Positions 8,454-55,050 of a stretch of 64,000 nucleotides of DNA are shown here, piece after piece. Both the position numbers and the translations under genes were made by a program. The notes below the pieces were generated by a model that was given only the letters and a program-made list of their open reading frames with translations, was not told the DNA's origin and searched no databases. The stretch comes from Macrostomum lignano. Its lineage: Eukaryota. How positions within the stretch are numbered: the stretch's first letter is position 1; the number at the start of each line of letters is the position of its first letter. Where the stretch lies: positions 1-64,000 of the forward strand of contig NIVC01001367.1 of NCBI GenBank assembly GCA_002269645.1, given 5' to 3'.

Positions 8454-8484
8454 CTGCGGGGTAGGATAAGAAAATAGAGGCTAG

Positions 8485-9022
8485 ATGATCCCCAGCTACT
8501 CATAGTAGTATGCGGTCCGCAGCTCCCGGTAAATCCCCAGCTACTCATAGTAGTATGCTGTCCGCAGCTCCCGGCAAATCCCCAGCTACTCATAGTAGTA
8601 TGCGGTCCGCAGCTATCGGTAAATCCCCAGCTACTCATAGTAGTATGCGGTCCGCAGCTATCGGTAAATCCCCAGCTACTCATAGTAGTATGCGGTCCGC
8701 AGCTCCCGGTAAATCCCCAGCTACTCATAGTAGTATGCGGTCCGCAGCTCCCGGCAAATCCCCAGCTACTCATAGTAGTATGCGGTCCGCAGCTCCCGGC
8801 AAATCCCCAGCTACTCATAGTAGTATGCGGTCCGCAGCTCCCGGTAAATCCCCAGCTACTCATAGTAGTATGCGGTCCGCAGCTCCCGGCAAATCCCCAG
8901 CTACTCATAGTAGTATGCGGTCCGCAGCTCCCGGTAAATCCCCAGCTACTCATAGTAGTATGCGGTCCGCAGCTCCCGGCAAATCCCCAGCTACTCATAG
9001 TAGTATGCGGTCCGCAGCTCCT
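8485..9022. repeat. 45-bp minisatellite filling the CNP intron between coding exons 1 and 2
   Basis: AGCTCCCGGTAAATCCCCAGCTACTCATAGTAGTATGCGGTCCGC, about 12 copies, occupying nearly all of the 579-nt intron. Confidence 0.95.
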
Positions 9023-9032
9023 GGCAACCAAC

Positions 9033-32862: not shown

Positions 32863-33559
32863 TGCTTCTACATTAGGCAAATTTAAGGCAGAATAATGAT
32901 CAAGTAGAAATCTGAAAGGAAATTTTCAGCTTCTGTAGTCGATAGTTACCCAAAGCACAACTAGCCTGCACTACTACAGGCGGCACTACAAAAGTTTTGA
33001 GCATCAAAGAAATATATATAAAAATTTACACATACAAATTTACAATATATTTTTGTTTCATCATTTTTAAACATCAAAAAAATTATTAAACAAATTTTAT
33101 TTTGATAATACTATGCTTAATGGACATCTTTTTATTGACTAAAATGACTTATTCAAATAATTAGGGTGTTACAAATATGAAGGATAGAAATTGATTGCTA
33201 CAATACTTATCTATAATTATTATAAAATTATTATACTATTAGACTATAGTTAAAAAGGTGGCTTTTGTGTGGAAAATATATAATTAGGCATACTCATATA
33301 AGTAAAGTATGATCTAGACTATAAGATCAACTTAAGTGTTATCACTATTGAAAGTATTACTTTTTTACAATTGGCTGATTGCCATACTGTTTAGATGAAC
33401 CCCTTTGGTGGCAAAAGAAGGAAAGGAATAGTGTAGCATAATGTATAACATTGTAGCTTATGAAAAAGACTAGATATATTAGGTCCTAGAATAGCTATGC
33501 ATACAAATGCCATTAAGTATAGAAGCAAAGCCAATATTCCTTAATGAACATTGGCTCTC

Positions 33560-37463: not shown

Positions 37464-37853
37464 TCACACAGCCTCCTCCTGCTCCAGCGGCATCGGCTCG
37501 GCCGCGGCCGGGTCGCCGACCTTGTCCTCCAGCAACGCGCCCGGCCGTCGCTGGCGCTCTTCGGCCTCCGGATCGCTGGGGCAGCCCAGGCCGAGGGTCT
37601 CAACCACCACCTGGTCGGGAGAGATGGTGCAGTTCAGGTAGCGCAGGAACACAGTCCGGATGTGCTGCACGGTGAAGGACTCCGAATGCTGCAGCATGGG
37701 CAGGTAGGCCGCCAGGAACTCCTCCACGAACTGGCACAGGCACTGCCGCTTGCGGGTGTGCCGCTGCTCGATCGGCGCCGGAAGCTTCTTGGTGGCCAGC
37801 TCCAGGCCGTAGGCGCCGCACATCATCACGGCGATTCGCTCCTCCAGCCGGTG
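37464..37853 (-). CDS. TIR-2TM gene, last exon (exon 8)
   Basis: Acceptor CTTCTCTCCGGCAG|CAC; HRLEERIAVMMCGAYGL...RHTRKRQCLCQFVEEF...; strongly C/G-ending codons; stop at 37464; AATAAA at about 37340. Confidence 0.75.
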   Translation of the reverse strand, partial: HRLEERIAVMMCGAYGLELATKKLPAPIEQRHTRKRQCLCQFVEEFLAAYLPMLQHSESFTVQHIRTVFLRYLNCTISPDQVVVETLGLGCPSDPEAEERQRRPGALLEDKVGDPAAAEPMPLEQEEAV

Positions 37854-37970
37854 CTGCCGGAGAGAAGTTGGGCCGTGCCGGTTCTCGCTGCGAGACAGGA
37901 GCTTTCAGCTACTCTAGCACTACGAGCTAAATTCCCAAAATTCAACTTCTAGACCTTCGTGTTTAAGCAA

Positions 37971-38435
37971 CCAGGTATGTAACCTGGTATCTAATCTGGT
38001 ATCCAGGTATCTAATCTGGCATCCAGGTATCTAATCTGGCATCCAGGTATCTAATCTGGTATCCTGGTATCTAATCTGGCATCCAGGTATCTAATCTGGT
38101 AACCTGGTATCTAATCTGGTAACCTGGTATCTAATCTGGTATCCTGGTATCTAATCTGGTAACCTGGTATCTAATCTGGTAACCTGATATCTAATCTGGT
38201 ATCCAGGTATCTAATCTCGTATCCTGGTATCTAATCTGGTATCCTTGTATCTAATCTCGTATCCTGGTATCTAATCTGGTATCCTGGTATCTAATCTGGT
38301 ATCCTGATATCTAATCTGGTATCCTGATATCTAATCTGGTATCCTGATATCTAATCTGGTATCCAGGTATCTAATCTGGTATCCTGGTATCTAATCTGGT
38401 ATCCTGATATCTAATCTGGTATCCAGGTATCTAAT
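37971..38435. repeat. 20-bp minisatellite (ATCCAGGTATCTAATCTGGT)
   Basis: About 23 variant copies within the last intron of the TIR-2TM gene. Confidence 0.95.
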
Positions 38436-38600
38436 TTACCAGGTATCCCAGAAACTCAATACGAATCTAACACTGGGTACAGACGCTGGGGCAGATGAAA
38501 AAAAGACAAATCAAGGACCTAGAAGACACGGCATCATCAGCAATGTCAAGCTACAGAGAGGATGCAGAACAGAGGATGGCGGTCTTAATTTCTGCATATT

Positions 38601-41600
38601 TTCATGGACTCCAGCTGCTGCCTGCACCCATGCAGTGCTTGAATTCATGGACTCCAGCTGCTGCCTGCGCCCATGCAGTGCTTGAATTCATGGACTCCAG
38701 CTGCTGCCTGCACCCATGCAGTGCTTGAATTCATGGACTCCAGCTGCCTGCACCCATGCAGTGCTTGAATTCATGGACTCCAGCTGCTGCACCCATGCAG
38801 TGCTTGAATTCATGGACTCCAGCTGCTGCCTGCACCCATGCAGTGCTTGAATTCATGGACTCCAGCTGCTGCCTGCACCCATGCAGTGCTTGAATTCATG
38901 GACTCCAGCTGCTGCCTGCACCCATGCAGTGCTTGAATTCATGGACTCCAGCTGCCTGCACCCATGCAGTGCTTGAATTCATGGACTCCAGCTGCTGCCT
39001 GCACCCATGCAGTGCTTGAATTCATGGACTCCAGCTGCTGCCTGCACCCATGCAGTGCTTGAATTCATGGACTCCAGCTGCTGCCTGCACCCATGCAGTG
39101 CTTGAATTCATGGACTCCAGCTGCTGCCTGCACCCATGCAGTGCTTGAATTCATGGACTCCAGCTGCTGCCTGCGCCCATGCAGTGCTTGAATTCATGGA
39201 CTCCAGCTGCTGCCTGCACCCATGCAGTGCTTGAATTCATGGACTCCAGCTGCTGCCTGCACCCATGCAGTGCTTGAATTCATGGACTCCAGCTGCTGCC
39301 TGCACCCATGCAGTGCTTGAATTCATGGACTCCAGCTGCTGCCTGCACCCATGCAGTGCTTGAATTCATGGACTCCAGCTGCTGCCTGCACCCATGCAGT
39401 GCTTGAATTCATGGACTCCAGCTGCTGCCTGCACCCATGCAGTGCTTGAATTCATGGACTCCAGCTGCTGCCTGCACCCATGCAGTGCTTGAATTCATGG
39501 ACTCCAGCTGCTGCCTGCACCCATGCAGTGCTTGAATTCATGGACTCCAGCTGCTGCACCCATGCAGTGCTTGAATTCATGGACTCCAGCTGCTGCCTGC
39601 ACCCATGCAGTGCTTGAATTCATGGACTCCAGCTGCTGCCTGCACCCATGCAGTGCTTGAATTCATGGACTCCAGCTGCTGCCTGCACCCATGCAGTGCT
39701 TGAATTCATGGACTCCAGCTGCTGCCTGCACCCATGCAGTGCTTGAATTCATGGACTCCAGCTGCTGCCTGCACCCATGCAGTGCTTGAATTCATGGACT
39801 CCAGCTGCTGCCTGCACCCATGCAGTGCTTGAATTCATGGACTCCAGCTGCTGCCTGCACCCATGCAGTGCTTGAATTCATGGACTCCAGCTGCTGCCTG
39901 CACCCATGCAGTGCTTGAATTCATGGACTCCAGCTGCTGCACCCATGCAGTGCTTGAATTCATGGACTCCAGCTGCTGCACCCATGCAGTGCTTGAATTC
40001 ATGGACTCCAGCTGCTGCCTGCACCCATGCAGTGCTTGAATTCATGGACTCCAGCTGCTGCACCCATGCAGTGCTTGAATTCATGGACTCCAGCTGCTGC
40101 CTGCACCCATGCAGTGCTTGAATTCATGGACTCCAGCTGCTGCCTGCGCCCATGCAGTGCTTGAATTCATGGACTCCAGCTGCTGCCTGCACCCATGCAG
40201 TGCTTGAATTCATGGACTCCAGCTGCTGCCTGCACCCATGCAGTACTTGAATTCATGGACTCCAGCTGCTGCCTGCACCCATGCAGTGCTTGAATTCATG
40301 GACTCCAGCTGCTGCCTGCACCCATGCAGTGCTTGAATTCATGAACTCCAGCTGCTGCCTGCACCCATGCAGTGCTTGAATTCATGGACTCCAGCTGCTG
40401 CCTGCACCCATGCAGTGCTTGAATTCATGGACTCCAGCTGCTGCCTGCACCCATGCAGTGCTTGAATTCATGGACTCCAGCTGCTGCCTGCACCCATGCA
40501 GTGCTTGAATTCATGGACTCCAGCTGCTGCCTGCACCCATGCAGTGCTTGAATTCATGGACTCCAGCTGCTGCCTGCGCCCATGCAGTGCTTGAATTCAT
40601 GGACTCCAGCTGCTGCCTGCACCCATGCAGTGCTTGAATTCATGGACTCCAGCTGCCTGCACCCATGCAGTGCTTGAATTCATGGACTCCAGCTGCTGCA
40701 CCCATGCAGTGCTTGAATTCATGGACTCCAGCTGCTGCCTGCACCCATGCAGTGCTTGAATTCATGGACTCCAGCTGCTGCCTGCACCCATGCAGTGCTT
40801 GAATTCATGGACTCCAGCTGCTGCCTGCACCCATGCAGTGCTTGAATTCATGGACTCCAGCTGCTGCCTGCACCCATGCAGTGCTTGAATTCATGGACTC
40901 CAGCTGCTGCCTGCATCCATGCAGTGCTTGAATTCATGGACTCCAGCTGCCTGCACCCATGCAGTGCTTGAATTCATGGACTCCAGCTGCTGCCTGCACC
41001 CATGCAGTGCTTGAATTCATGGACTCCAGCTGCTGCCTGCACCCATGCAGTGCTTGAATTCATGGACTCCAGCTGCTGCCTGCACCCATGCAGTGCTTGA
41101 ATTCATGGACTCCAGCTGCTGCCTGCACCCATGCAGTGCTTGAATTCATGGACTCCAGCTGCTGCCTGCACCCATGCAGTGCTTGAATTCATGGACTCCA
41201 GCTGCTGCCTGCACCCATGCAGTGCTTGAATTCATGGACTCCAGCTGCTGCCTGCACCCATGCAGTGCTTGAATTCATGGACTCCAGCTGTGCCTGCACC
41301 CATGCAGTGCTTGAATTCATGGACTCCAGCTGCTGCCTGCACCCATGCAGTGCTTGAATTCATGGACTCCAGCTGCTGCCTGCACCCATGCAGTGCTTGA
41401 ATTCATGGACTCCAGCTGCCTGCACCCATGCAGTGCTTGAATTCATGGACTCCAGCTGCTGCCTGCACCCATGCAGTGCTTGAATTCATGGACTCCAGCT
41501 GCTGCCTGCACCCATGCAGTGCTTGAATTCATGGACTCCAGCTGCTGCCTGCGCCCATGCAGTGCTTGAATTCATGGACTCCAGCTGCTGCCTGCACCCA

Positions 41601-44600
41601 TGCAGTGCTTGAATTCATGGACTCCAGCTGCTGCCTGCACCCATGCAGTGCTTGAATTCATGGACTCCAGCTGCTGCCTGCACCCATGCAGTGCTTGAAT
41701 TCATGGACTCCAGCTGCTGCCTGCGCCCATGCAGTGCTTGAATTCATGGACTCCAGCTGCTGCCTGCACCCATGCAGTGCTTGAATTCATGGACTCCAGC
41801 TGCTGCCTGCACCCATGCAGTGCTTGAATTCATGGACTCCAGCTGCCTGCACCCATGCAGTGCTTGAATTCATGGACTCCAGCTGCTGCCTGCACCCATG
41901 CAGTGCTTGAATTCATGGACTCCAGCTGCTGCCTGCACCCATGCAGTGCTTGAATTCATGGACTCCAGCTGCTGCCTGCACCCATGCAGTGCTTGAATTC
42001 ATGGACTCCAGCTGCTGCCTGCACCCATGCAGTGCTTGAATTCATGGACTCCAGCTGCTGCCTGCACCCATGCAGTGCTTGAATTCATGGACTCCAGCTG
42101 CCTGCACCCATGCAGTGCTTGAATTCATGGACTCCAGCTGCTGCCTGCACCCATGCAGTGCTTGAATTCATGGACTCCAGCTGCTGCCTGCACCCATGCA
42201 GTGCTTGAATTCATGGACTCCAGCTGCTGCCTGCACCCATGCAGTGCTTGAATTCATGGACTCCAGCTGCTGCCTGCACCCATGCAGTGCTTGAATTCAT
42301 GGACTCCAGCTGCTGCACCCATGCAGTGCTTGAATTCATGGACTCCAGCTGCTGCCTGCACCCATGCAGTGCTTGAATTCATGGACTCCAGCTGCTGCAC
42401 CCATGCAGTGCTTGAATTCATGGACTCCAGCTGCTGCCTGCACCCATGCAGTGCTTGAATTCATGGACTCCAGCTGCTGCCTGCACCCATGCAGTGCTTG
42501 AATTCATGGACTCCAGCTGCTGCCTGCACCCATGCAGTGCTTGAATTCATGGACTCCAGCTGCTGCCTGCACCCATGCAGTGCTTGAATTCATGGACTCC
42601 AGCTGCTGCACCCATGCAGTGCTTGAATTCATGGACTCCAGCTGCTGCCTGCGCCCATGCAGTGCTTGAATTCATGGACTCCAGCTGCTGCCTGCACCCA
42701 TGCAGTGCTTGAATTCATGGACTCCAGCTGCTGCCTGCACCCATGCAGTGCTTGAATTCATGGACTCCAGCTGCTGCCTGCACCCATGCAGTGCTTGAAT
42801 TCATGGACTCCAGCTGCTGCCTGCACCCATGCAGTGCTTGAATTCATGGACTCCAGCTGCTGCCTGCACCCATGCAGTGCTTGAATTCATGGACTCCAGC
42901 TGCTGCACCCATGCAGTGCTTGAATTCATGGACTCCAGCTGCTGCCTGCACCCATGCAGTGCTTGAATTCATGGACTCCAGCTGCTGCCTGCACCCATGC
43001 AGTGCTTGAATTCATGGACTCCAGCTGCTGCACCCATGCAGTGCTTGAATTCATGGACTCCAGCTGCTGCCTGCACCCATGCAGTGCTTGAATTCATGGA
43101 CTCCAGCTGCTGCCTGCACCCATGCAGTGCTTGAATTCATGGACTCCAGCTGCTGCCTGCACCCATGCAGTGCTTGAATTCATGGACTCCAGCTGCTGCC
43201 TGCACCCATGCAGTGCTTGAATTCATGGACTCCAGCTGCTGCCTGCACCCATGCAGTGCTTGAATTCATGGACTCCAGCTGCTGCCTGCACCCATGCAGT
43301 GCTTGAATTCATGGACTCCAGCTGCTGCCTGCACCCATGCAGTGCTTGAATTCATGGACTCCAGCTGCTGCCTGCACCCATGCAGTGCTTGAATTCATGG
43401 ACTCCAGCTGCTGCCTGCACCCATGCAGTGCTTGAATTCATGGACTCCAGCTGCTGCCTGCACCCATGCAGTGCTTGAATTCATGGACTCCAGCTGCTGC
43501 CTGCACCCATGCAGTGCTTGAATTCATGGACTCCAGCTGCCTGCACCCATGCAGTGCTTGAATTCATGGACTCCAGCTGCCTGCACCCATGCAGTGCTTG
43601 AATTCATGGACTCCAGCTGCTGCCTGCGCCCATGCAGTGCTTGAATTCATGGACTCCAGCTGCCTGCACCCATGCAGTGCTTGAATTCATGGACTCCAGC
43701 TGCTGCCTGCACCCATGCAGTGCTTGAATTCATGGACTCCAGCTGCTGCCTGCGCCCATGCAGTGCTTGAATTCATGGACTCCAGCTGCCTGCACCCATG
43801 CAGTGCTTGAATTCATGGACTCCAGCTGCCTGCACCCATGCAGTGCTTGAATTCATGGACTCCAGCTGCTGCCTGCACCCATGCAGTGCTTGAATTCATG
43901 GACTCCAGCTGCCTGCACCCATGCAGTGCTTGAATTCATGGACTCCAGCTGCTGCCTGCACCCATGCAGTGCTTGAATTCATGGACTCCAGCTGCTGCCT
44001 GCACCCATGCAGTGCTTGAATTCATGGACTCCAGCTGCTGCCTGCACCCATGCAGTACTTGAATTCATGGACTCCAGCTGCTGCCTGCACCCATGCAGTG
44101 CTTGAATTCATGGACTCCAGCTGCTGCCTGCACCCATGCAGTGCTTGAATTCATGGACTCCAGCTGCTGCCTGCACCCATGCAGTGCTTGAATTCATGGA
44201 CTCCAGCTGCTGCCTGCACCCATGCAGTGCTTGAATTCATGGACTCCAGCTGCCTGCACCCATGCAGTGCTTGAATTCATGGACTCCAGCTGCTGCCTGC
44301 GCCCATGCAGTGCTTGAATTCATGGACTCCAGCTGCTGCCTGCACCCATGCAGTGCTTGAATTCATGGACTCCAGCTGCTGCCTGCACCCATGCAGTGCT
44401 TGAATTCATGGACTCCAGCTGCCTGCACCCATGCAGTGCTTGAATTCATGGACTCCAGCTGCTGCACCCATGCAGTGCTTGAATTCATGGACTCCAGCTG
44501 CTGCCTGCACCCATGCAGTGCTTGAATTCATGGACTCCAGCTGCTGCCTGCGCCCATGCAGTGCTTGAATTCATGGACTCCAGCTGCCTGCACCCATGCA

Positions 44601-45556
44601 GTGCTTGAATTCATGGACTCCAGCTGCTGCCTGCACCCATGCAGTGCTTGAATTCATGGACTCCAGCTGCTGCCTGCGCCCATGCAGTGCTTGAATTCAT
44701 GGACTCCAGCTGCCTGCACCCATGCAGTGCTTGAATTCATGGACTCCAGCTGCCTGCACCCATGCAGTGCTTGAATTCATGGACTCCAGCTGCTGCCTGC
44801 ACCCATGCAGTGCTTGAATTCATGGACTCCAGCTGCCTGCACCCATGCAGTGCTTGAATTCATGGACTCCAGCTGCTGCCTGCACCCATGCAGTGCTTGA
44901 ATTCATGGACTCCAGCTGCTGCCTGCACCCATGCAGTGCTTGAATTCATGGACTCCAGCTGCTGCCTGCACCCATGCAGTGCTTGAATTCATGGACTCCA
45001 GCTGCTGCCTGCACCCATGCAGTGCTTGAATTCATGGACTCCAGCTGCTGCCTGCACCCATGCAGTGCTTGAATTCATGGACTCCAGCTGCTGCCTGCAC
45101 CCATGCAGTGCTTGAATTCATGGACTCCAGCTGCTGCACCCATGCAGTGCTTGAATTCATGGACTCCAGCTGCTGCCTGCGCCCATGCAGTGCTTGAATT
45201 CATGGACTCCAGCTGCTGCCTGCACCCATGCAGTGCTTGAATTCATGGACTCCAGCTGCTGCCTGCACCCATGCAGTGCTTGAATTCATGGACTCCAGCT
45301 GCTGCACCCATGCAGTGCTTGAATTCATGGACTCCAGCTGCTGCCTGCACCCATGCAGTGCTTGAATTCATGGACTCCAGCTGCTGCCTGCACCCATGCA
45401 GTGCTTGAATTCATGGACTCCAGCTGCTGCCTGCACCCATGCAGTGCTTGAATTCATGGACTCCAGCTGCTGCCTGCACCCATGCAGTGCTTGAATTCAT
45501 GGACTCCAGCTGCTGCCTGCGCCCATGCAGTGCTTGAATTCATGGACTCCAGCTGC
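38601..45556. repeat. 7-kb satellite of 43-bp units (39- and 40-bp variants), one EcoRI site per unit
   Basis: CATGGACTCCAGCTGCTGCCTGCACCCATGCAGTGCTTGAATT, roughly 160 near-identical copies. Confidence 0.98.
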
Positions 45557-45849
45557 AGTATGCAGTGCTGCTGGGCTTCAAGTCTTGAAAGTGCCAACAA
45601 GATTCAATTGAAACGGCAATCTTTATCGGCACGCGTTCCATGCTTAAAATCCAAATGAAAGTCCACCAAAGTCTCCCGTGTCTGCGGAGCCCCCCGCCTT
45701 TGAGCCGAAAGGATATTTTCTGGGGAAATCCCGCCGCCCTCCCCGATTTCCCTCGGGGAGCTGAGCGCGGACTGAACTCCCACCAGACTGTGCTCTCAGT
45801 GAGCTCGAGAATTTTAATCGTCAAAAGTGCGCGAGCTGAGCAGACTCAC

Positions 45850-45951
45850 GCCTCTAAGATAGTCGGAGTCCAGGGTGTACACTGCCAGCAGGCTCTCCAG
45901 CTTCCTGTGCTCCGCTGGCCGCACTCGCAGCAGAATTTGGCGAATTTGTTC
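45850..45951 (-). CDS. TIR-2TM gene exon 7
   Basis: CCCGCAG|GAA ... GGC|GTGAGT; 102 nt; EQIRQILLRVRPAEHRKLESLLAVYTLDSDYLRG. Confidence 0.75.
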
Positions 45952-45974
45952 CTGCGGGCGGCGCGGTGAATGAT

Positions 45975-46590
45975 TGAGCTGGCCGCAACCTACTCAGCTG
46001 GCCGCAACCTACTCAGCTGGCCGCAACCTACTCAGCTGACCGCGACCTACTCAGCTGGCCGCAACCTACTCAGCTGGCCACAACCTACTCAGCTGGCCGC
46101 AACCTACTCAGCTGGCCGCAACCTACTCAGCTGGCCGCAACCTACTCAGCTGGCCGCAACCTACTCAGCTGGCCGCAACCTACTCAGCTGGCCGCAACCT
46201 ACTCAGCTGGCCGCAACCTACTCAGCTGGCCGCAACCTACTCAGTTGACCGCGACCTACTCAGCTGGCCGCAACCTACTCAGCTGGCCGCAACCTACTCA
46301 GCTGGCCGCAACCTACTCAGCTGGCCGCAACCTACTCAGTTGACCGCGACCTACTCAGCTGACTGTTCCCTACTCAGCTGGCTGATCCCCTACTCAACTG
46401 GCCGTTCCCTTCTCAGCTGACTGTTCCCTACTCAGCTGACCGTTCCCTACTCAGTTGACCGTTCCCTACTCAGCTGGCTGTTCCCTACTCAGCTGACCGT
46501 TCCCTACTCAGCTGACCGTTCCCTACTCAGCTGGCTGTTCCCTACTCAGCTGACCGTTCCCTACTCAGCTGGCTGTTCCCTACTCAGCTG
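45975..46590. repeat. 19-bp minisatellite with a polar switch between two unit types
   Basis: CTGGCCGCAACCTACTCAG changes to CTGACCGTTCCCTACTCAG at about 46360. Confidence 0.95.
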
Positions 46591-46773
46591 GATGCTTCCC
46601 TGCTAAACTTGGTGTTTGTCAGTGAATCATAAAAATCATTACTCACAATGCACTCCTCAGGATTGTAGTACATCAGAAACACCTGAAAGCAGTTGGATCG
46701 CATTAAAAATAGGTTTGCAGTTGTTGCACAGAGGTATGTGCTGCAGCTTGGCTAAGAGCATTCGAACCCGCAC

Positions 46774-46884
46774 CTGGTAGCTGTCGTCCTTCTTGAAGTG
46801 GAAGGTGGACACGATGAAGGGCCGCCTGCTGGCATAAAGCAGCGCGTTCGACAGCACCGTGTTCATGAAAATCCGCCTTGACAG
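46774..46884 (-). CDS. TIR-2TM gene exon 6
   Basis: CCCACAG|CTG ... CAG|GTGCGG; 111 nt; LSRRIFMNTVLSNALLYASRRPFIVSTFHFKKDDSYQ. Confidence 0.75.
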
Positions 46885-46904
46885 CTGTGGGATGGCGGAG
46901 TGAG

Positions 46905-47752
46905 GCTGGTGAGTTTATCCCCGCACTGCAGTGCAAGGCTGGTGAGTTTATCCCCGCACTGCAGTGCAAGGCTGGTGAGTTTATCCCGCACTGCAGTGCA
47001 AGGCTGGTGAGTTTATCCCGCACTGCAGTGCAAGGCTGGTGAGTTTATCCCGCACTGCAGTGCAAGGCTGGTGAGTTTATCCCGCACTGCAGTGCAAGGC
47101 TGGTGAGTTTATCCCGCACTGCAGTGCAAGGCTGGTGAGTTTATCCCGCACTGCAGTGCAAGGCTGGTGAGTTTATCCCGCACTGCAGTGCAAGGCTGGT
47201 GAGTTTATCCCCGCACTGCAGTGCAAGGCTGGTGAGTTTATCCCGCACTGCAGTGCAAGGCTGATGAGTTTATCCCGCACTGCAGTGCAAGGCTGGTGAG
47301 TTTATCCCGCACTGCACTGCAGTGCAAGGCTGGTGAGTTTATCCCGCACTGCAGTGCAAGGCTGGTGAGTTTATTGCAGTGCAAGGCTGGTGAGTTTATT
47401 GCAGTGCAAGGCTGGTGAGTTTATTGCAGTGCAAGGCTGGTGAGTTTATTGCAGTGCAAGGCTGGTGAGTTTATTGCAGTGCAAGGCTGGTGAGTTTATT
47501 GCAGTGCAAGGCTGGTGAGTTTATTGCAGTGCAAGGCTGGTGAGTTTATTGCAGTGCAAGGCTGGTGAGTTTATTGCAGTGCAAGGCTGGTGAGTTTATT
47601 GCAGTGCAAGGCTGGTGAGTTTATTGCAGTGCAAGGCTGGTGAGTTTATTGCAGTGCAAGGCTGGTGAGTTTATTGCAGTGCAAGGCTGGTGAGTTTATT
47701 GCAGTGCAAGGCTGGTGAGTTTATTGCAGTGCAAGGCTGGTGAGTTTATCCC
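46905..47752. repeat. 32-bp then 25-bp minisatellite
   Basis: GCAAGGCTGGTGAGTTTATCCCGCACTGCAGT switches to GCAAGGCTGGTGAGTTTATTGCAGT at about 47370. Confidence 0.95.
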
Positions 47753-48287
47753 GCACAAAGCTCCGTATGCTAAAAGCCCAGCTCAGCTGAGAAGCTTCTG
47801 TGCCGGTCGCTGCGAGCCCCGAGCACATCAGCTGCCGCGATCCGCGCTGCCACTTGCCTTCCCCACCCCCTGCCTGCTCTTAACTGAGGAGTGGCACAAG
47901 TGATGAGGCATAGAGGATTAAGGCATGAAACGGGCAGAGACTGGCTTTGGTTTGAGCTGCCTGCTCAGGCTTCTCGCCAGTCACTGCCGCTCTCCACCTC
48001 CCCTCTCATTCTTCCCAATCCTTGAGGCAAAGCCAACTGCTTCCGTGCCAAAGAAGGAAAGTTGATGACGGATCAATTACTGTGGGAGCCGCTTCCCGCC
48101 CAGCCTCCCGGCCTGCTGGGCTGCCCCTTAATTTCAGGGAAGGTCAGCGGGGGCTGCCGAATGCTAAAGTGAATTTGAGAGCCAAGCAGCGATCGGCTTG
48201 ATGAGGCCGGTCTGATGGCATTTGTCTGTTGCCAGCGGGTTCCTGGCAGATTTGCTGCCTACAGGGCAGTTCACTGCGGCTGCTCAC

Positions 48288-48388
48288 CTCCTCCTTGTGA
48301 AAGTTGTAGGCGCGCCAGCGGATGAAGTACCCAACCAGCAGCATGACGGCGGGCAGCACAAAGACCCCCAGACGCACGAACTGGATGT
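48288..48388 (-). CDS. TIR-2TM gene exon 5 (second TM helix)
   Basis: CCCGCAG|AC ... GAG|GTGAGC; YIQFVRLGVFVLPAVMLLVGYFIRWRAYNFHKEE; phases 1/0 fit the neighbouring exons. Confidence 0.78.
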
Positions 48389-48471
48389 CTGCGGGAGGGG
48401 GTGGTGGGTGCTCGGCGATGTGAGCAACGGCAATGCGAGCCGCAACGATTTGAGTTCAGCTCGGCGCTCAC

Positions 48472-48637
48472 ACTTGGCCGGCTTCCGCAGTAGCAGCAGC
48501 GCGCCCAGGATGGCCAAAATCCACAGCAGCAGCAGCGCCAGGAAGGCCAGCGAGGGCAGGCGGGAGAGGCGCCAGTCGAGGCGCTGACCGTCGCTGAAGA
48601 TGCACGACATCATGGCGTGCAGGTCCGCGGCGCTGAA
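48472..48637 (-). CDS. TIR-2TM gene exon 4 (first TM helix)
   Basis: CTCCAG|TTC ... AAGT|GTGAGC; FSAADLHAMMSCIF...LAFLALLLLWILAILGALLLLRKPAK. Confidence 0.78.
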
Positions 48638-48669
48638 CTGGAGTGGAGTGGCGGACCGGGGAGCTGGTT

Positions 48670-48843
<174 letters not shown>

Positions 48844-49554
48844 TATTGAGCAGGAACCCTTGTACAGTACAAGATGGCAAGGCTGGTCACCAAGGCATCA
48901 GATATTGATCATCCAGTGCTAATATTTTAGCAGCCGGCGCAGCTCCTTAATCTCATTAGTTGCGGATTAAATTTACAGCCCTCATGGCGGACTGACGAAG
49001 CCAATGGCCTCAGCTGGTGCACGGCGAATGTCTGCCGGACGGCCGGGGATTGCATAAACCGCATCCCCATCCCTATTTCACTCGCTTCATTTTCTCCTTG
49101 TCCCCATTACTCGGCCCAGCCCAGACTCCCTTCCCCAGCCAGTATCTGCCGCCTCGGCCTGCCCAGCATCCAGATGAGGGGGCTTGTCTGCAAGAGATGC
49201 TAGATCTGCATCGGGCATGCGGGATCCGCCTGTCCGTCTCCCCCGGCAGCCCCGGGTGCTGCATTGCAGCACTGAGCAGCCATCGCAGATGCCTGGCTGC
49301 TTGCCAGCCTCTCTCCTCTCCGCCTGCCCTCCCAGTTCCACATCTATCCATCTCCGAGAAAGCTGAGCGCTTTTAGCGAGCGGTGCTGAAGAGGCCAGTG
49401 GCGCAACAGCTCCCCGCCTCTGCCTCAGTTTTGGGGATTTGGATCTGAGCGGGGAGAGTGGGATGGGACAGACAGGAATTAGTTGACGGGAGAGCGGGTG
49501 AGAATGAAGGAGGGCGAGAGTGAGATGGAGTAGGATGGGACAGTGAGCCACAGA

Positions 49555-49855
49555 AGGAGACGGGATCCGCAGGGGAAGGTGCTGGGTCCTTCATCTGCAA
49601 GGGAAGGTGCTGGGTCCTTCATCTGCAGGGGAAGGTGCTGGGTCCTTCATCTGCAAGGGAAGGTGCTGGGTCCGGCATCTGCAATGGAAGGTGCTGGGTC
49701 CGGCATCTGCAGGAGAAGGTGCTGGGTCCGGCATCTGCAGGAGAAGGTGCTGGGTCCGGCATCTGCAGGGGAAGGTGCTGGGTCCGGGATCCGCAGGAGA
49801 AGGTGCTGGGTCCGGGATCCGCAGGAGAAGGTGCTGGGTCCGGGATCCCGAGTCC
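49555..49855. repeat. 28-bp minisatellite
   Basis: GCAGGAGAAGGTGCTGGGTCCGGCATCT variants starting just inside the donor end of intron 3. Confidence 0.93.
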
Positions 49856-49867
49856 CGAGCGGCTCAC

Positions 49868-50057
49868 GAAGGAGTCGACCAGGTCCACCGACGGCTGGTG
49901 CCTGGCGTGCTCCAGGGAGTGGCGGAACTCGGCCTGGCGCCCCACTGGCCGGTGAGGCGGCCCCTGGCCAACACCAGCAGGTGGCCGTTCTCGGAGCCTG
50001 CGGAGTGCGACATCACCGACCAGAGCGTCGTGGAGGAATCCGACAGCACGATGTTCT
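49868..50057 (-). CDS. TIR-2TM gene exon 3 (apparent 1-nt deletion at about 49940)
   Basis: CTCTCAG|AG ... TTC|GTGAGC; 190 nt, one short of a phase-consistent length. The codon bias shifts frame at a GGGG run (…GQWG then RQAEFRHSLEH…). Confidence 0.62.
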
Positions 50058-50148
50058 CTGAGAGGCGGAGGCGACAAGCTTCTCAATGAATTTCTTGTTT
50101 GTAAACACCATAAAACACAGAAGTTTGGAGCACAGTGCGCAGACTCAC

Positions 50149-50916
50149 CGTGCTTGAGCGTTAGCAGCAGGCGATCGAAGAAGTTGCGGTGGTTGGCGCT
50201 GAGCACAGTCAGCGGCTTGATGAGATCGGGCAGCTCGAGGGCGTCGCCCAGGGTGACGGGAATGATTTTTCGCTTCCGCTGGCCGGCGGGCGGGCAGGCG
50301 TGCTGCAGGGCGTCCTCGAGCTCCGGCCAGCTGTGGGTCACGAACTGGCCGCTGAGCACCAGGATGACGCGCTGGCTCAGCATCACCGAGCAGACGACGT
50401 TCTGGATGCGCGAGAAGGTCCGGTTGAAGTCGCGCATGTCGTAGCAGAGGCGGTAGCAGTAGGGCTCCGCCTCCAGCCGCTTCACGAGGCCCAGCGCCCA
50501 CTGCCTGTCCGAGGCGTGGTAGCAGACGAAGGCGTGGTACAGGTACTTCGGGTCCAGCGCGTGCGCGGGCTGGTGGACGTCCATCATGAGGATTACGGGG
50601 TCCGAGGCGATGGAGGAGCGGGCGGAGCGGCCAGAGTACTGCGAGAAGCTGCCGCGCTGCTGCAGCGGACCGGCAGGCGGAGGCACCGACAGCTGCACAC
50701 CGCCGCCGCCGCTGCCGCCGCTCATCGACTGCTGGGAGCGGCGGCGCCGGTCAGCGCTGCGGAGTTCCACCTGCAGCAGGTTGCTGGGGCTTCGCGATAA
50801 GACGGAGTCCGCCGCGGGCGCTGAGCTCGTTTCGAGGGCTGCGGCAGCGGCGGCGGCTGCAGCGGCGGTTGGCTGAAGGCTGGCATCGCAGTCGGTGCCG
50901 ACCAGGCAGTGGGTTT
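50149..50916 (-). CDS. TIR-2TM gene exon 2: low-complexity N-terminus plus TIR domain
   Basis: YHAFVCYH..DRQW, RLCYDMRDF, SQRVILVLSGQFVTHSWPELE, RKIIPVTL, LPDLIKPLT form a TIR fold; acceptor CCGCAG|AA and donor CACG|GTGAGT; 768 nt, phase 1/1. Confidence 0.88.
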
Positions 50917-50934
50917 CTGCGGGTTGAGAGAAGG

Positions 50935-51205
50935 GAAGGCTGGAGATGAGAACTGAAGGCTGGAGATGAGAAGTGAAGGCTGGAGATGAAAATTGAAGGC
51001 TGGAGATGAAAATTGAAGGCTGGAGATGAAAATTGAAGGCTGGAGATGAAAATTGAAGGCTGGAGATGAGAAGTGAAGGCTGGAGATGAGAAGTGAAGGC
51101 TGGAGATGAAAATTGAAGGCTGGAGATGAGAATTGAAGGCTAGAGATGAGAATTGAAGGCTGGAGATGAGAATTGAAGGTTGGGGATGAGAATTGAAGGC
51201 TGGAG
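50935..51205. repeat. 20-bp minisatellite (AGGCTGGAGATGAAAATTGA)
   Basis: About 13 copies abutting the exon 2 acceptor. Confidence 0.95.
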
Positions 51206-51744
51206 CTGAATAGTGGTTACAGCTCGTGCGTTGCATCCCTATAGATTCTATACCATACATGTAACAGCAGACATGCTAATGCCTCTTAAACCACAAACCC
51301 TCTCTGGCTCAATGCTAATTAGCAGATAAAATAAAGCAACTGGATGTGCTGAAGACCACCCGACTGGCTCCTTGGCTGCAGATTCCAATCGACTCAAAAC
51401 TCGACTCAGCGGGAAGTCGAGTTTTGCGCTCACCGAGCGGAGCTCAGAGCCGCCGCACTTTGTAAAAGTGCATTGCTTCTGTACTTTGAAATCCTGCAGT
51501 TCCACCTCACCCGCGGCTCTGCCCTCACCCCGGCTCTGCTGCCGGAGCAGGGAAGCCAAGGGTGCCGAGAATTGAATTTGCATGGAATTCTGCGCCTGCA
51601 GGTCTCTGCATGCCTGTCTGAGTGGCTGCCTCTGTCAGATGCGGCTGGCTGATTCAATCTTTTTTTTCCTGTTGACGCATTCAGCCTGACCGCCGCTGCT
51701 CTGCTCTTCCTTGACCGGCTCGGGCTGCTCGGGTGACGCCCCGC

Positions 51745-53135
51745 TCCCTGCTCGGGTGTGACTTCCCGCTCCCTGCTTGGGTGTGACTTCCCGCTCCCTG
51801 CTTGGGTGTGACTTCCCGCTCCCTGCTCGACTGACTTCCCGCTCCCTGCTTGGGTGTGACTTCCCGCTCCCTGCTCGGGTGTGACTTCCCGCTCCCTGCT
51901 TGGGTGTGACTTCCCGCTCCCTACTCGACTGACTTCCCGCTCCCTGCTTGGGTGTGACTTCCCGCTCCCTACTCGACTGACTTCCCGCTCCCTGCTTGGG
52001 TGTGACTTCCCGCTCCCTGCTCGGGTGTGACTTCCCGCTCCCTGCTTGGGTGTGACTTCCCGCTCCCTGCTCGGGTGTGACTTCCCGCTCCCTACTCGAC
52101 TGACTTCCCGCTCCCTGCTTGGGTGTGACTTCCCGCTCCCTGCTTGGGTGTGACTTCCCGCTCCCTACTCGACTGACTTCCCGCTCCCTGCTTGGGTGTG
52201 ACTTCCCGCTCCCTACTCGACTGACTTCCCGCTCCCTGCTTGGGTGTGACTTCCCGCTCCCTACTCGACTGACTTCCCGCTCCCTGCTCGACTGACTTCC
52301 CGCTCCCTGCTCGACTGACTTCCCGCTCCCTGCTTGGGTGTGACTTCCCGCTCCCTACTCGACTGACTTCCCGCTCCCTGCTTGGGTGTGACTTCCCGCT
52401 CCCTGCTTGGGTGTGACTTCCCGCTCCCTACTCGACTGACTTCCCGCTCCCTGCTTGGGTGTGACTTCCCGCTCCCTGCTTGGGTGTGACTTCCCGCTCC
52501 CTACTCGACTGACTTCCCGCTCCCTGCTTGGGTGTGACTTCCCGCTCCCTGCTTGGGTGTGACTTCCCGCTCCCTACTCGACTGACTTCCCGCTCCCTGC
52601 TTGGGTGTGACTTCCCGCTCCCTACTCGACTGACTTCCCGCTCCCTGCTTGGGTGTGACTTCCCGCTCCCTACTCGACTGACTTCCCGCTCCCTGCTTGG
52701 GTGTGACTTCCCGCTCCCTACTCGACTGACTTCCCGCTCCCTGCTTGGGTGTGACTTCCCGCTCCCTGCTTGGGTGTGACTTCCCGCTCCCTACTCGACT
52801 GACTTCCCGCTCCCTGCTTGGGTGTGACTTCCCGCTCCCTGCTTGGGTGTGACTTCCCGCTCCCTACTCGACTGACTTCCCGCTCCCTGCTTGGGTGTGA
52901 CTTCCCGCTCCCTGCTTGGGTGTGACTTCCCGCTCCCTACTCGATTGACTTCCCGCTCCCTGCTTGGGTGTGACTTCCCGCTCCCTGCTTGGGTGTGACT
53001 TCCCGCTCCCTGCTTGGGTGTGACCTCCCGCTCCCTACTCGAGTGACTTCCCGCTCCCTGCTCGAGTGACTTGCCGCTTCCTGCTCGGTTGACTTCCCGC
53101 TCCCTGCTCGAGTGACTTCCCGTTCCCTACTCGAG
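51745..53135. repeat. Composite 25/23-bp minisatellite
   Basis: CTTCCCGCTCCCTGCTTGGGTGTGA and CTTCCCGCTCCCTACTCGACTGA alternate in AB/AAB patterns. Confidence 0.95.
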
Positions 53136-53195
53136 TGACCCCCCGCTCCTTATTGCAGTTCACCCCGCTCTGCCGCAGGGACTGTCCCAGCTCAC

Positions 53196-53268
53196 CCTCC
53201 TCAATGTGGCTGAGCTCAAAGGCCCGATTGAAGAAGGCGGACTGCGAGCAGCGGAGCCGAGTGCTCAT
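53196..53268 (-). CDS. Candidate first coding exon of the TIR-2TM gene
   Basis: ATG at 53268; MSTRLRCSQSAFFNRAFELSHIEE; donor GAGG|GTGAGC is phase 1, matching the exon 2 acceptor. An alternative phase-1 candidate starts at 51583. Confidence 0.5.
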
Positions 53269-53819: not shown

Positions 53820-55050
53820 CTCTTTGATAGCATTCACCTACCTCCCCTCTCCCTCCCATAAGCCTCCCCCTCTCCCCTTCTCCCTCCCACTCAGCCTCCA
53901 CTATTTACTTCTCCCTCCCACTCAGCCTCCTTCTCTCCACTTCTCCCTCCCACTCAGCCTCCCCCTCTCCACTTCTCCCTCCAATTTGCCTCCCCCTCTC
54001 CCCTTCTCCCTCCAATTTGCCTCCCCCTCTCCACTTCTCCCTCCAATTTGCCTCCCCCTCTCCACTTCTCCCTCCAATTTGCCTCCCCCTCTCCCCTTCT
54101 CCCTCCAATTTGCCTCCCCCTCTCCACTTCTCCCTCCAATTTGCCTCCCCCTCTCCACTTCTCCCTCCAATTTGCCTCCCCCTCTCCACTTCTCCCTCCA
54201 ATTTGCCTCCCCCTCTCCACTTCTCCCTCCAATTTGCCTCCCCCTCTCCCTTCTCCCTCCAATTTGCCTCCCCTCTCCCCTTCTCCCTCCAATTTGCCTC
54301 CCCCTCTCCCCTTCTCCCTCCAATTTGCCTCCCCCTCTCCACTTCTCCCCCAATTTGCCTCCCCCTCTCCACTTCTCCCTCCCACTCAGCCTCCACTCTC
54401 CCCTTCTCCCTCCCACTCAGCCTCCCCCTCTCCACTTCTCCCCCCAATTTGCCTCCCCCTCTCCACTTCTCCCTCCCACTCAGCCTCCACTCTCCACTTC
54501 TCCCTCCCACTCAGCCTCCACTCTCCACTTCTCCCTCCCACTCAGCCTCCCCCTCTCCACTTCTCCCTCCCACTCTGCCTCCTCTCCACTTCTCCCTCCC
54601 ACTCAGCCTCCCCCTCTCCACTTCTCCCTCCCACTCAGCCCCCCTCTCCCTATCCCTCCCAATCAGCCTCTACTTCTCCACTTCTCCCTCCCACTCAGCC
54701 TCCCCCTCTCCACTTCTCCCTCATACTCAGCCTCTACTTCTTCCCTTCTCCCTCCCACTCTGCCTCCCCCTCTCCACTCTCCCCACTCAGTCTTCCCCTC
54801 TCCCCCCAATCTGCCTCCCCCACTCTACTCCTCCCTGTCCCTTTCTCTCTCCTCTCCTTTCTCTCAACTCTCTTTCTCTCCCTCTACTTCTCTCTTTCCC
54901 TTTTTCACCCCTCTCTTCTCTCCCCTCTTTTCCTCCCCACCCCTTTCTCTCCTGTCTTCCTCTCCTCCCATTTTTCTCCTTCCTTTCTCTCCCTGTCACT
55001 CCTTCCTCTCTAGCTTTCCCCATCTCCCAATTCTCCCCCCTCTCTCCCTC
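53820..55050. repeat. Polypyrimidine/polypurine minisatellite and low-complexity tract
   Basis: About 30-bp units such as CTCCAATTTGCCTCCCCCTCTCCACTTCTCC; the plus strand has very few G residues. Confidence 0.93.

What the first reader, a model, noticed from the sequence alone, without database searches (positions are those of the whole stretch)
37464..53268. Uncharacterised TIR-first, two-transmembrane protein with a Cys/His C-terminal domain, hidden across 16 kb of satellites
Eight exons join with consistent phases (one 1-nt fix needed) into about 633 aa: low-complexity N-terminus, TIR domain, two hydrophobic helices, and a domain of about 200 aa ending in RHTRKRQCLCQFVEEF. This topology is inverted relative to TLR/IL-1R, where the TIR is C-terminal; a two-helix hairpin would put both soluble domains in the cytosol. 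The TIR keeps a Glu four residues after the conserved Trp (SWPELE), the position of the catalytic Glu in NADase TIRs such as SARM1, plant TIRs and bacterial Thoeris. Inference: a membrane-anchored innate immune sensor or NAD-cleaving effector, conceptually like TIR-STING or bacterial TIR-TM defence proteins.
Basis: partly seen in the sequence, partly recalled or inferred. Interest (0 to 1): 0.8.

Follow-up and report, generated by a model that had tools for sequence, protein, structure and literature searches.

The report
Membrane-anchored TIR protein with orphan-fold domain
A real, intact flatworm (Macrostomum lignano) gene, spread over 13 kb of satellite-filled introns, encodes a TIR immune-signalling domain tied to a membrane by a two-helix hairpin and followed by a conserved domain of unknown fold; the same uncharacterised protein exists in molluscs and a ribbon worm.

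Summary
The gene is real. On the minus strand, eight GT-AG exons (50725..37464) join in frame, with no sequence fix, into a 555-aa protein. A profile built only from relatives in other phyla matches it end to end (406 bits).

The window is Macrostomum lignano. Public annotation holds only 145-148-aa fragments of this gene.

The order is: disordered N-terminus, TIR, small middle module, two-helix membrane hairpin, C-terminal domain of about 185 aa. The same order occurs in Lineus (nemertean) and in gastropod, bivalve and cephalopod molluscs. All are labelled 'uncharacterized'. Only 51 representatives were found among 1.84 billion proteins.

The C-terminal domain models very confidently (pLDDT 95) but has no structural neighbour in PDB or BFVD. 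It keeps an invariant Cys...His-x5-Cys-x-Cys set.

The TIR is TLR/MyD88-like, not SARM1-like. Its Glu137 does sit at the catalytic position. However, six of eleven relatives have Gln, Arg or Ile there, so NAD cleavage cannot be the family's shared function.

No link to STING or to bacterial TIR-TM effectors was found.

Most likely it is a membrane-tethered TIR signalling scaffold. An enzymatic (cADPR) role in the Glu-bearing lineages remains open.

The parts
50149..50725 (-). Coding exon 1: ATG at 50725, about 57 aa of low-complexity N-terminus, then the TIR domain (about aa 58-192, nt 50554-50149). Trp133 is at 50329-50327 and Glu137 at 50317-50315. The donor is G|GTGAGT, phase 1.
   Evidence: The TIR profile hits TLR15/2/10/6/1 at 1e-19 to 1e-16. 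The exon is 99% identical to UniRef A0A1I8IB76 (M. lignano TIR fragment).
49868..50057 (-). Exon 2: conserved middle module (ENIVLSDSSTTLWSV...NGHLL...GQW) plus a linker of about 25 aa whose frame is uncertain. Phase 1 in, phase 2 out.
   Evidence: It aligns to Lineus residues 213-260. Public fragment P0001 uses the same acceptor.
48472..48632 (-). Exon 3: juxtamembrane helix and hydrophobic helix 1 (FLALLLLWILAILGALLLL, aa 286-304). It ends in phase 1, inside the short loop.
   Evidence: Exon-sized environmental fragments (for example P0021, P0025-P0032) stop at the same loop position.
48288..48388 (-). Exon 4: hydrophobic helix 2 (VRLGVFVLPAVMLLVGYFI, aa 314-332) and the basic RWRAYNFHKEE cluster.
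   Evidence: Phe319 is invariant; R315, L316, V318 and P322 are nearly invariant.
46774..46884 (-). Exon 5: start of the C-terminal domain (LSRRIFMNTV...FIVSTFHFKKDDSYQ).
46647..46682 (-). Exon 6: 36-nt mini-exon VFLMYYNPEECI, carrying conserved Cys391 (46652-46650). It is preceded by a 91-nt GT-AG intron.
   Evidence: It is colinear with Lineus ...IYFLYYQRQECI...
45850..45951 (-). Exon 7: EQIRQILLRVRPAEHRKLESLLAVYTLDSDYLRG.
   Evidence: Fragments P0037 and P0039 cover the same segment as a single exon.
37464..37853 (-). Exon 8: HRLEERIAVMM...KKLPAPIEQRHTRKRQCLCQFVEEFLAAYLP...LGLG, then an acidic tail. His458 is at 37760-37758, Cys464 at 37742-37740, Cys466 at 37736-37734. The TGA stop is at 37466-37464.
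   Evidence: This is the most conserved segment of the family.
53196..53268 (-). It is phase-compatible with an acceptor at 50916 but otherwise unsupported.
38601..45556 (.). 43-bp satellite, about 164 copies, filling most of the 7,996-bp last intron. Smaller arrays lie at 37979-38435 (20 bp), 45977-46591 (19 bp), 47350-47749 (25 bp, with imperfect copies running down to about 46915), 48671-48843 ((AGAC)n) and 49561-49847 (28 bp). Upstream arrays lie at 50935-51209 and 51733-53128.

Best explanation
This is an intact M. lignano member of a small, previously uncharacterised protein family found in Spiralia (flatworm, nemertean, molluscs).

The protein has a cytosolic TLR/MyD88-type TIR domain and a small conserved middle module. 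A tight two-helix hairpin inserts it into a membrane. A long stalk helix then leads back into the cytosol to a compact C-terminal domain of about 185 aa. That domain has an unrecognised fold and an invariant Cys-His-Cys-Cys set, probably a zinc site.

The most likely mode of action is a membrane-tethered TIR signalling adaptor. On a trigger, the TIR domains would assemble homotypically with each other or with other TIR proteins at the membrane. The C-terminal domain would engage the downstream partner or ligand.

Shown here: the gene structure, the domain order, the topology logic, the conservation, the TIR subtype and the orphan fold.

Inferred only: the signalling role, zinc binding, which membrane it sits in, and any part in immunity.
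For: GENE MODEL
- Eight GT-AG exons give 555 aa with no stop or frameshift.
- The match to a profile of non-flatworm relatives is 406 bits and in one piece.

SAME ARCHITECTURE ELSEWHERE
- Lineus longissimus XP_064626799, Haliotis, Babylonia, Saccostrea, Mytilus, Octopus, Argonauta and Candidula.
- One relative is an uninterrupted 579-aa ORF on a 1.9-kb Logan contig. That is what a transcript would look like, with TIR, hairpin and C-domain on one mRNA.
- Exon-sized fragments from other species start and stop at the same alignment positions as M. lignano exons 3, 4, 5, 7 and 8.

HAIRPIN
- Two helices score 2.2-3.0 on the Kyte-Doolittle scale in every full-length member except the Haliotis model, where the same scan finds only helix 2.
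- A loop of 5-12 residues separates them, and a basic cluster follows helix 2.
- The AF2 model shows helices 301-323 and 331-381.

TIR SUBTYPE
- Profile E-values are 1e-19 to 1e-16 to TLR15/2/10/6/1 and 1e-13 to MyD88.
- Foldseek's top hits are TLR1/6/10/2, Hydra TRR-2 and MyD88; SARM1 ranks 39th.

C-TERMINAL DOMAIN
- pLDDT is 94.9 and pTM 0.90.
- There is no PDB or BFVD neighbour: best E 0.79 and 0.09, TM-score at most 0.22.
- There is no significant PDB sequence hit; the best profile E-value is 0.023, to Tip20, taken as chance.
- C391, H458, C464 and C466 are nearly invariant.

CATALYTIC POSITION
- It reads Q, R or I in 6 of 11 members. This argues for a non-enzymatic shared function.
Against: - There is no transcript evidence from M. 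lignano itself. Public annotation holds only fragments (P0001, P0002).
- No functional data exist for any family member.
- Flatworms are reported to lack TLRs (PMC7958881), so the TIR's partner is unknown.
- Residues inside the hairpin are strongly conserved (invariant Phe319; Arg315, Pro322; Trp in helix 1). This suggests the membrane part does more than anchor the protein.
- M. lignano, Lineus, two gastropods and one unnamed relative keep the catalytic-position Glu. An enzymatic role in those lineages is therefore not excluded.
- The zinc site is inferred from conservation only. Model coordinates could not be inspected.
Confidence: 0.55

Rival explanations
1. Enzymatic TIR. On oligomerisation, the M. 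lignano protein (and the other Glu-bearing members) cleaves or cyclises NAD+ at the membrane. It would either deplete NAD+ or make cADPR-type signals. The C-terminal domain would act as regulator or as sensor of the product.
For: - Trp133 and Glu137 form the W-x3-E motif. Glu137 aligns with TLR2 E716.
- The 2026 preprint lists TLR2 E716 as the catalytic position, equivalent to TLR4 E750 and SARM1 E642.
- In the Lineus model the Glu lies on alphaC.
- That preprint reports Glu-dependent cADPR production by TLR-type TIRs, including human TLR4 and a brachiopod TLR.
Against: - The Glu is replaced by Gln, Arg or Ile in 6 of 11 family members. E-to-Q abolishes activity in every TIR tested in the preprint.
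- TLR2, the closest solved relative, has the Glu and was inactive. Only 12 of 61 Glu-bearing animal TIRs were active.
- Similarity to proven NADase TIRs is weak: AbTIR 1e-4, Roq1 1e-3, RUN1 0.04, and SARM1 not detected by sequence.
- No family member was in the preprint's tested set.
Confidence: 0.25
2. Decaying or non-functional copy. In this highly duplicated, satellite-rich genome, the locus is a pseudogene or an unexpressed paralogue that merely still looks intact.
For: - The introns are swollen with satellites.
- A diverged paralogue fragment (P0002, 87% identity) reads through three frames in exon 2.
- Homopolymer-length differences separate the window from P0001 in the exon-2 linker.
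- The linker lacks the family's vP..L..HGI motif in any frame.
Against: - All eight exons are open with canonical splice sites.
- Every nearly invariant family residue listed is present apart from Asp161 and Cys162 of the TIR ...EDC...P segment, where M. lignano reads GDA.
- The match is 406 bits from end to end.
Confidence: 0.08
3. Two neighbouring genes wrongly joined: a short cytosolic TIR protein (exons 1-2) and a separate two-helix membrane protein (exons 3-8).
For: - Public M. lignano predictions stop after exon 2, at the TGA inside the GTGAGC donor (P0001).
- There are 1.2 kb between exon 2 and exon 3.
Against: - Full-length relatives in three phyla carry both parts in one protein, including RefSeq models and an uninterrupted 579-aa ORF on a 1.9-kb contig.
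- The phases of exons 2 and 3 match without adjustment.
- Among 1.84 billion representatives, no full-length protein with the hairpin and C-domain lacks the TIR; the only TIR-less hits are exon-sized fragments and truncated models.
Confidence: 0.04

Closest known systems
TIR domains of the TLR1/2/6/10/15 group and MyD88 (scaffold-type animal TIRs)
   Same: - They are the best sequence and structure matches: E 1e-19 to 1e-13, Foldseek probability 1.0, target TM-score 0.7-0.85.
- They share the YxAFVSY-like betaA strand, the VLS betaC strand and the W-x3-E motif on alphaC.
   Different: - Here the TIR is N-terminal.
- There is no LRR or Ig ectodomain and no death domain.
- The BB loop lacks the Pro-Gly of TLRs (RDFNRTFS).
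- The membrane link is a C-terminal hairpin, not a single N-terminal span.
Oyster TIR-STING fusion (PDB 6wt6/6wt7)
   Same: - It is an invertebrate protein with an N-terminal TIR followed by a second cytosolic module.
- Its TIR is the top single-sequence PDB hit (E 1e-6).
   Different: - The C-terminal domain here is not STING. Foldseek of the confident model finds no PDB neighbour at all.
- Oyster TIR-STING has no hairpin at the equivalent place.
SARM1 (and C. elegans TIR-1)
   Same: It is an animal TIR with a Glu at the same alphaC position (SARM1 E642 = W638+4).
   Different: - There are no ARM or SAM domains here.
- The TIRs are not detectably similar by sequence: hhalign aligns 22 columns at probability 17%.
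- SARM1 ranks 39th by structure.
Membrane-tethered sorting adaptors TRAM/TICAM2 and MAL/TIRAP
   Same: - The concept matches: a TIR adaptor held at a membrane to nucleate TIR assemblies.
- Their TIRs are detectable relatives (E 1e-6 to 1e-3).
   Different: - Those proteins attach by myristate or a PIP2-binding motif, not by a transmembrane hairpin.
- They have no C-terminal globular domain.
Bacterial TIR and transmembrane defence proteins (Thoeris, CBASS or Pycsar-type 2-TM effectors)
   Same: The analogy is a TIR together with membrane helices.
   Different: - PADLOC and NCBIfam return only weak TIR-region hits, and nothing for the hairpin or the C-domain.
- There is no evidence of common descent beyond the TIR fold.
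'ecTIR-DC' families of invertebrate TIR proteins (Gerdol et al. 2017, Dev Comp Immunol 70:145)
   Same: - That survey catalogued conserved, uncharacterised TIR-domain families in bivalves and other invertebrates.
- This family, which is present in Mytilus and oysters, may be one of them. This is a lead from memory and from citing papers.
   Different: The paper is not held in the library, so the assignment could not be checked.

Membership tests
TIR domain superfamily (Pfam PF01582/PF13676) | A significant sequence match to TIR profiles or structures over the whole flavodoxin-like domain of about 135 aa. | tested here: met
   - The family TIR profile hits TLR and MyD88 TIRs at 1e-19 to 1e-13.
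- Precomputed Pfam hits are on record: both TIR families on the Lineus orthologue and TIR_2 on P0006.
- Foldseek gives probability 1.0 to TLR TIRs.
Catalytic (NAD+-processing) TIRs | A glutamate on helix alphaC at the position of SARM1 E642 / TLR4 E750. | tested here: met
   - Glu137 = Trp133+4 and aligns with TLR2 E716.
- The preprint's Table S4 lists TLR2 E716 as the catalytic-position residue.
- However, the position is E in only 5 of 11 family members.
Catalytic (NAD+-processing) TIRs | Demonstrated Glu-dependent NAD+ consumption or cADPR-isomer production. | not testable with these tools
   This needs an enzyme or LC-MS assay. No family member is among the 154 TIRs tested in 10.64898/2026.04.20.719644.
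Toll-like receptors | LRR ectodomain, single transmembrane span, C-terminal TIR. | tested here: not met
   The TIR is N-terminal, there are no LRRs, and two helices follow the TIR.
SARM1 / TIR-1 | ARM repeats plus tandem SAM domains N-terminal to the TIR, and a SARM-type TIR. | tested here: not met
   - Only about 57 disordered residues precede the TIR.
- SARM1 is not detected by sequence.
TIR-STING | A STING cyclic-dinucleotide-binding domain C-terminal to the TIR. | tested here: not met
   - The C-domain model (pLDDT 95) has no PDB match, although STING and TIR-STING structures are in the library.
- In the full-length search, 6wt6 and 6wt7 match over about 140 columns (the length of a TIR domain), with low whole-chain TM-scores (0.35-0.37).
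Spiralian TIR-hairpin-CHCC family (defined here; Lineus LOC135487228 and its mollusc relatives) | Colinear TIR + NGQ/GxW middle module + two-helix hairpin (VRLxVFxxP) + C-domain with C...ERxxVM...QRHxxxxxCLCQ[FY]xE. | tested here: met
   The match is 406 bits in a single domain over HMM positions 74-543 of 548, and 43% identity to Lineus over the hairpin and C-domain.
ecTIR-DC classification (Gerdol et al. 2017) | Assignment to one of the numbered conserved families by domain architecture. | not tested
   The paper is not available in the held library.

The most novel reading that the evidence does not exclude
The protein is a self-contained animal TIR signalling unit. On activation, the Glu137-bearing TIR would make cADPR or another NAD-derived nucleotide at a membrane. 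The orphan-fold, Cys/His-containing C-terminal domain, and/or the unusually conserved hairpin, would be a new kind of receptor or effector for that signal. This would be an animal counterpart of the bacterial Thoeris producer-plus-membrane-effector logic, fused in one chain. Some mollusc lineages would have lost the catalytic half and kept only the scaffold.
Probability: 0.1. Interest if true: 0.85.

Novelty: new variant of a known kind. Interest (0 to 1): 0.55.

Why it matters
- Flatworms are reported to lack Toll-like receptors, yet they keep TIR proteins whose partners and outputs are unknown.
- This locus gives a full-length model of one such protein that public annotation had only in pieces.
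- It belongs to a family conserved across at least three spiralian phyla. It joins a TLR-like TIR to a membrane hairpin and to a confidently folded domain that has no structural relative in PDB or BFVD.
- That makes a concrete, testable candidate for a non-TLR, membrane-based TIR pathway in invertebrates. M. lignano allows RNAi and transgenesis.
- It also offers a candidate new protein fold with a probable metal site.
- Recent claims say that TLR-type TIRs can make cADPR. The natural E/Q/R/I variation at the catalytic position within one orthologous family is a ready-made comparison set for testing them.

Tried and rejected
1. It is not needed, because the eight exons are in phase as they stand. 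I scored three alternative frames for the 25-aa exon-2 linker against the family HMM. The scores were 406.2, 406.0 and 401.9 bits, so homology cannot decide.
2. The last-exon acceptor at 37880. I replaced it with 37853, because the longer form inserts 10 residues that Lineus lacks.
3. The upstream exon at 53268. It is phase-compatible but adds no score, so I kept it only as an optional part.
4. Word-index homologue searches with the TIR exon and with a two-sequence profile. They returned almost nothing. The exhaustive HMMER search was what revealed the family.
5. Handing spliced M. lignano protein to the restricted tools (representatives search, contig look-up). Lineus P0003 and single window exons served as proxies instead.
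6. Contig look-ups for P0001, P0002 and P0003. Nothing is on record, so no paralogue or Lineus DNA was available for dN/dS or for a direct intron comparison.
7. PDB sequence and profile searches of the C-domain. The only results were a marginal Tip20 hit at E 0.023 and another marginal hit at E 0.033, all taken as chance.
8. Foldseek against PDB and BFVD. Nothing was found.
9. PADLOC and NCBIfam. Only weak TIR hits appeared.
10. hhalign of the family TIR against SARM1 TIR. It aligned only 22 columns and did not reach the Glu. Positional equivalence was therefore established through TLR2 and TLR4 instead.
11. Cluster look-ups for unnamed fragments. They gave no taxon names.
12. Model coordinates are not exposed, so the clustering of Cys/His residues could not be measured.
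Full report
WHAT IS THERE

The window is genomic DNA of the flatworm Macrostomum lignano. The TIR exon is 99% identical to UniRef A0A1I8IB76, a 148-aa 'TIR domain-containing protein' fragment (P0001). It is 87% identical to a second fragment, P0002.

On the minus strand I located eight exons by open frames, splice motifs and colinearity with relatives:
- 50725-50149
- 50057-49868
- 48632-48472
- 48388-48288
- 46884-46774
- 46682-46647
- 45951-45850
- 37853-37464

Every intron is GT-AG and every phase agrees. The joined CDS is 1,668 nt, giving 555 aa with a single terminal stop.

A 43-bp unit repeated about 164 times (38601-45556) fills most of the 8-kb last intron. Shorter arrays have 20-, 19-, 25-, 4- and 28-bp units.

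IS IT MORE THAN CHANCE?

Yes. A profile HMM built only from relatives in other phyla aligns the spliced protein in one piece, positions 74-543 of 548, at 406 bits.

No 1-nt repair is needed. A 91-nt intron (46773-46683) and a 12-codon mini-exon keep the frame, and the homologues are gap-free across that junction.

I confirmed that this is phase-compatible and gives 643 aa. It contributes nothing to the homology score, and the N-termini of the family are not conserved. The first ATG after a good acceptor near 50774 is 50725, so the N-terminus stays open between 555 and 643 aa.

About 25 linker residues at the end of exon 2 can be read in the assembled frame, or in a +1-shifted frame that uses an acceptor 5 nt upstream. 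The family profile scores the two equally (406.2 against 406.0 bits). The public fragment P0001 differs from the window by two compensating homopolymer-length changes exactly there.

The motif RHTRKRQCLCQFVEEF is present, but the protein continues for about 80 more residues.

THE FAMILY

The hairpin-plus-C-terminal part has 43% identity over 83% of its length to Lineus longissimus LOC135487228. That protein is 540 aa, RefSeq-annotated as 'uncharacterized', with Pfam TIR hits at its N-terminus.

An exhaustive HMMER search of 1.84 billion representative proteins found only 51 matches. The full-length named ones come from these molluscs:
- Haliotis rubra
- Babylonia areolata
- Saccostrea
- Mytilus galloprovincialis
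- Octopus bimaculoides
- Argonauta hians
- Candidula unifasciata

The rest are unnamed exon-sized fragments from environmental or Logan assemblies. These fragments begin and end at the alignment positions of M. lignano exons 3, 4, 5, 7 and 8. Several TM1 fragments run on as '...P-S-K-Y', which I read as read-through of a phase-1 A|GTAAGTA donor. It lies at the same loop codon where the M. lignano intron sits, so this intron position appears conserved. This is my inference from the sequences.

One relative, P0006, is an uninterrupted 579-aa ORF on a 1,892-nt Logan contig from run SRR21676472. That is what a transcript would look like, and it carries TIR, hairpin and C-domain together.

No M. 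lignano protein in the databases contains the hairpin or the C-domain. The full-length gene is therefore new relative to the public annotation searched here.

ARCHITECTURE AND TOPOLOGY

All full-length members are colinear:
- a variable disordered N-terminus;
- the TIR domain;
- a stretch modelled as disordered;
- a small conserved module (S..S...NGQ.L....G.W);
- a juxtamembrane helix;
- hydrophobic helix 1, with a conserved Trp;
- a loop of 5-12 residues;
- hydrophobic helix 2 (VRLxVFxxP, with an invariant Phe);
- a basic cluster (RWRR...K);
- the C-terminal domain.

Hydropathy finds both helices in every full-length member except the Haliotis model, where the scan finds only helix 2.

The AlphaFold2 model of the Lineus protein has mean pLDDT 80. 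It shows:
- TIR at residues 84-211;
- a low-confidence stretch at 213-232;
- a beta-hairpin/helix module at 239-286;
- helices at 301-323 and 331-381, the second continuing about 30 residues beyond the membrane as a stalk.

With so short a loop, both ends must lie on the same side of the membrane. TIR domains are cytosolic, there is no signal peptide, and the basic cluster follows helix 2. Together these place both soluble parts in the cytosol. The argument is from sequence, not experiment.

THE TIR AND ITS GLUTAMATE

The family TIR profile matches TLR15/2/10/6/1 TIRs at 1e-19 to 1e-16, MyD88 at 1e-13 and oyster TIR-STING at 7e-12. Proven NADase TIRs are far weaker: AbTIR 1e-4, Roq1 1e-3, RUN1 0.04. 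SARM1 is not listed. Structure search agrees, with TLR1/6/10/2, Hydra TRR-2 and MyD88 first and SARM1 at rank 39.

In the phmmer alignment it pairs with TLR2 E716. I verified the SARM1 TIR sequence against PDB, which fixes E642 as W638+4.

A 2026 preprint (10.64898/2026.04.20.719644) lists SARM1 E642, TLR4 E750 and TLR2 E716 as the catalytic-position residues. It reports Glu-dependent cADPR production by TLR4 TIR and some invertebrate TLR TIRs. TLR2 was not active, and only 12 of 61 Glu-bearing animal TIRs were. In the Lineus model the equivalent Glu159 lies on helix alphaC, residues 148-167.

So the positional claim is right. Within the family, however, the residue varies:
- Glu in M. lignano, Lineus, P0006, Babylonia and Candidula;
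- Gln in Saccostrea, Haliotis, Octopus and Argonauta;
- Arg in Mytilus;
- Ile in P0043.

E-to-Q abolishes activity in all tested TIRs, so catalysis cannot be the function that holds this family together. It may still exist in the Glu-bearing lineages. No member of the family is among the sequences tested in the preprint.

THE C-TERMINAL DOMAIN

The model was built with a 31-row alignment. Residues 356-540 of Lineus fold with mean pLDDT 94.9 and pTM 0.90. The fold is a long helix, a beta-hairpin and six further helices.

Foldseek finds no neighbour. The best PDB E-value is 0.79 with TM-scores of at most 0.21. The best BFVD E-value is 0.09.

Sequence and profile searches of PDB give nothing significant; the best E-value is 0.023, taken as chance. 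Bacterial defence and NCBIfam libraries match nothing in this domain.

It is therefore not STING, not a death-fold adaptor domain present in PDB, and not a known bacterial effector. No AlphaFold DB search was possible.

Nearly invariant residues include Cys391, Glu431, Met436, His458, Cys464, Cys466 and Glu470 in M. lignano numbering. In the model, the Cys at the start of one helix, the His in the preceding long loop and the CxC at the start of the next helix are placed where a zinc knuckle could form.

MECHANISM

The evidence best fits a membrane-tethered TIR signalling scaffold (confidence about 0.55). TIR-TIR assembly at the membrane would bring together the C-terminal domains, which bind an unknown partner or ligand.

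The strong conservation inside the hairpin hints that the membrane segment has a specific role, such as oligomerisation or a partner contact.

The rivals are:
- an enzymatic TIR in the Glu-bearing lineages (about 0.25);
- a silent or decaying copy (about 0.08);
- two genes wrongly joined (about 0.04).

Flatworms are reported to lack TLRs but to keep TIR proteins (PMC7958881). The upstream trigger here is therefore unknown.

NOVELTY AND SCORE

The TIR domain is a known kind. The combination with a hairpin and an orphan-fold Cys/His domain is an uncharacterised variant that public databases label only 'uncharacterized protein'. It may already have a number in the ecTIR-DC catalogue of Gerdol et al. 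2017, which I could not read.

I rate interest at 0.55. This is a solid, testable new family and a possible new fold in a tractable flatworm. It is one of many uncharacterised invertebrate TIR families, and it has no functional evidence yet.

Noticed in passing
window 24844-32880 (- strand): A single uninterrupted 2,678-aa ORF encodes an ATM/Tel1-type PI3K-like kinase. Its last 400 aa match human ATM at E 1e-128. It lies just downstream of the TIR gene on the same strand. An 8-kb intronless ATM is unusual next to a gene with seven introns.
   Followed up: partly
window 20192-21667 (- strand): A 491-aa ORF has a reverse-transcriptase domain of the non-LTR retrotransposon type. Its best PDB matches are R2 and LINE-1 ORF2 proteins, at E 1e-9 to 1e-7.
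   Followed up: partly
window 49868-50057 (exon 2), around 49930-49945: The public fragment P0001 differs from the window by two compensating homopolymer-length changes (GQWAPGPSS against GQWGARPSS). The paralogue fragment P0002 reads through all three frames of this exon. The cause is either assembly indel noise or real indel variation in the linker.
   Followed up: partly
UniRef entry behind P0002 (A0A1I8FHQ9): A 145-aa M. lignano fragment that is plainly the TIR/exon-2 part of a paralogue is named 'NR LBD domain-containing protein' by its source. This is probably a mislabel.
   Followed up: no
window 15030-15596 and 8991-9686 (- strand): Two further protein-like ORFs. One starts MPLDLAFSFDTTGSM... 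and, by eye, resembles a von Willebrand A-type domain. The other has a P-loop (GLPGSGKST) and an N-terminal MGNSNS that could be a myristoylation signal. Neither was searched.
   Followed up: no
whole window, for example 2474-3621, 6976-7432, 8102-9172, 51733-53128, 53848-54783: The window is crowded with many different short-unit tandem satellites (units of about 16-75 bp). They create long spurious ORFs on both strands. Any ORF-based gene call here needs homology support.
   Followed up: partly
P0056/P0018 (Octopus bimaculoides XP_052833621/2): The octopus orthologue has a low-complexity insertion of about 170 aa (Asn/Ser-rich) inside the TIR domain, at the BB-loop region. RefSeq names it 'probable serine/threonine-protein kinase pats1', apparently because of that low-complexity stretch.
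   Followed up: no
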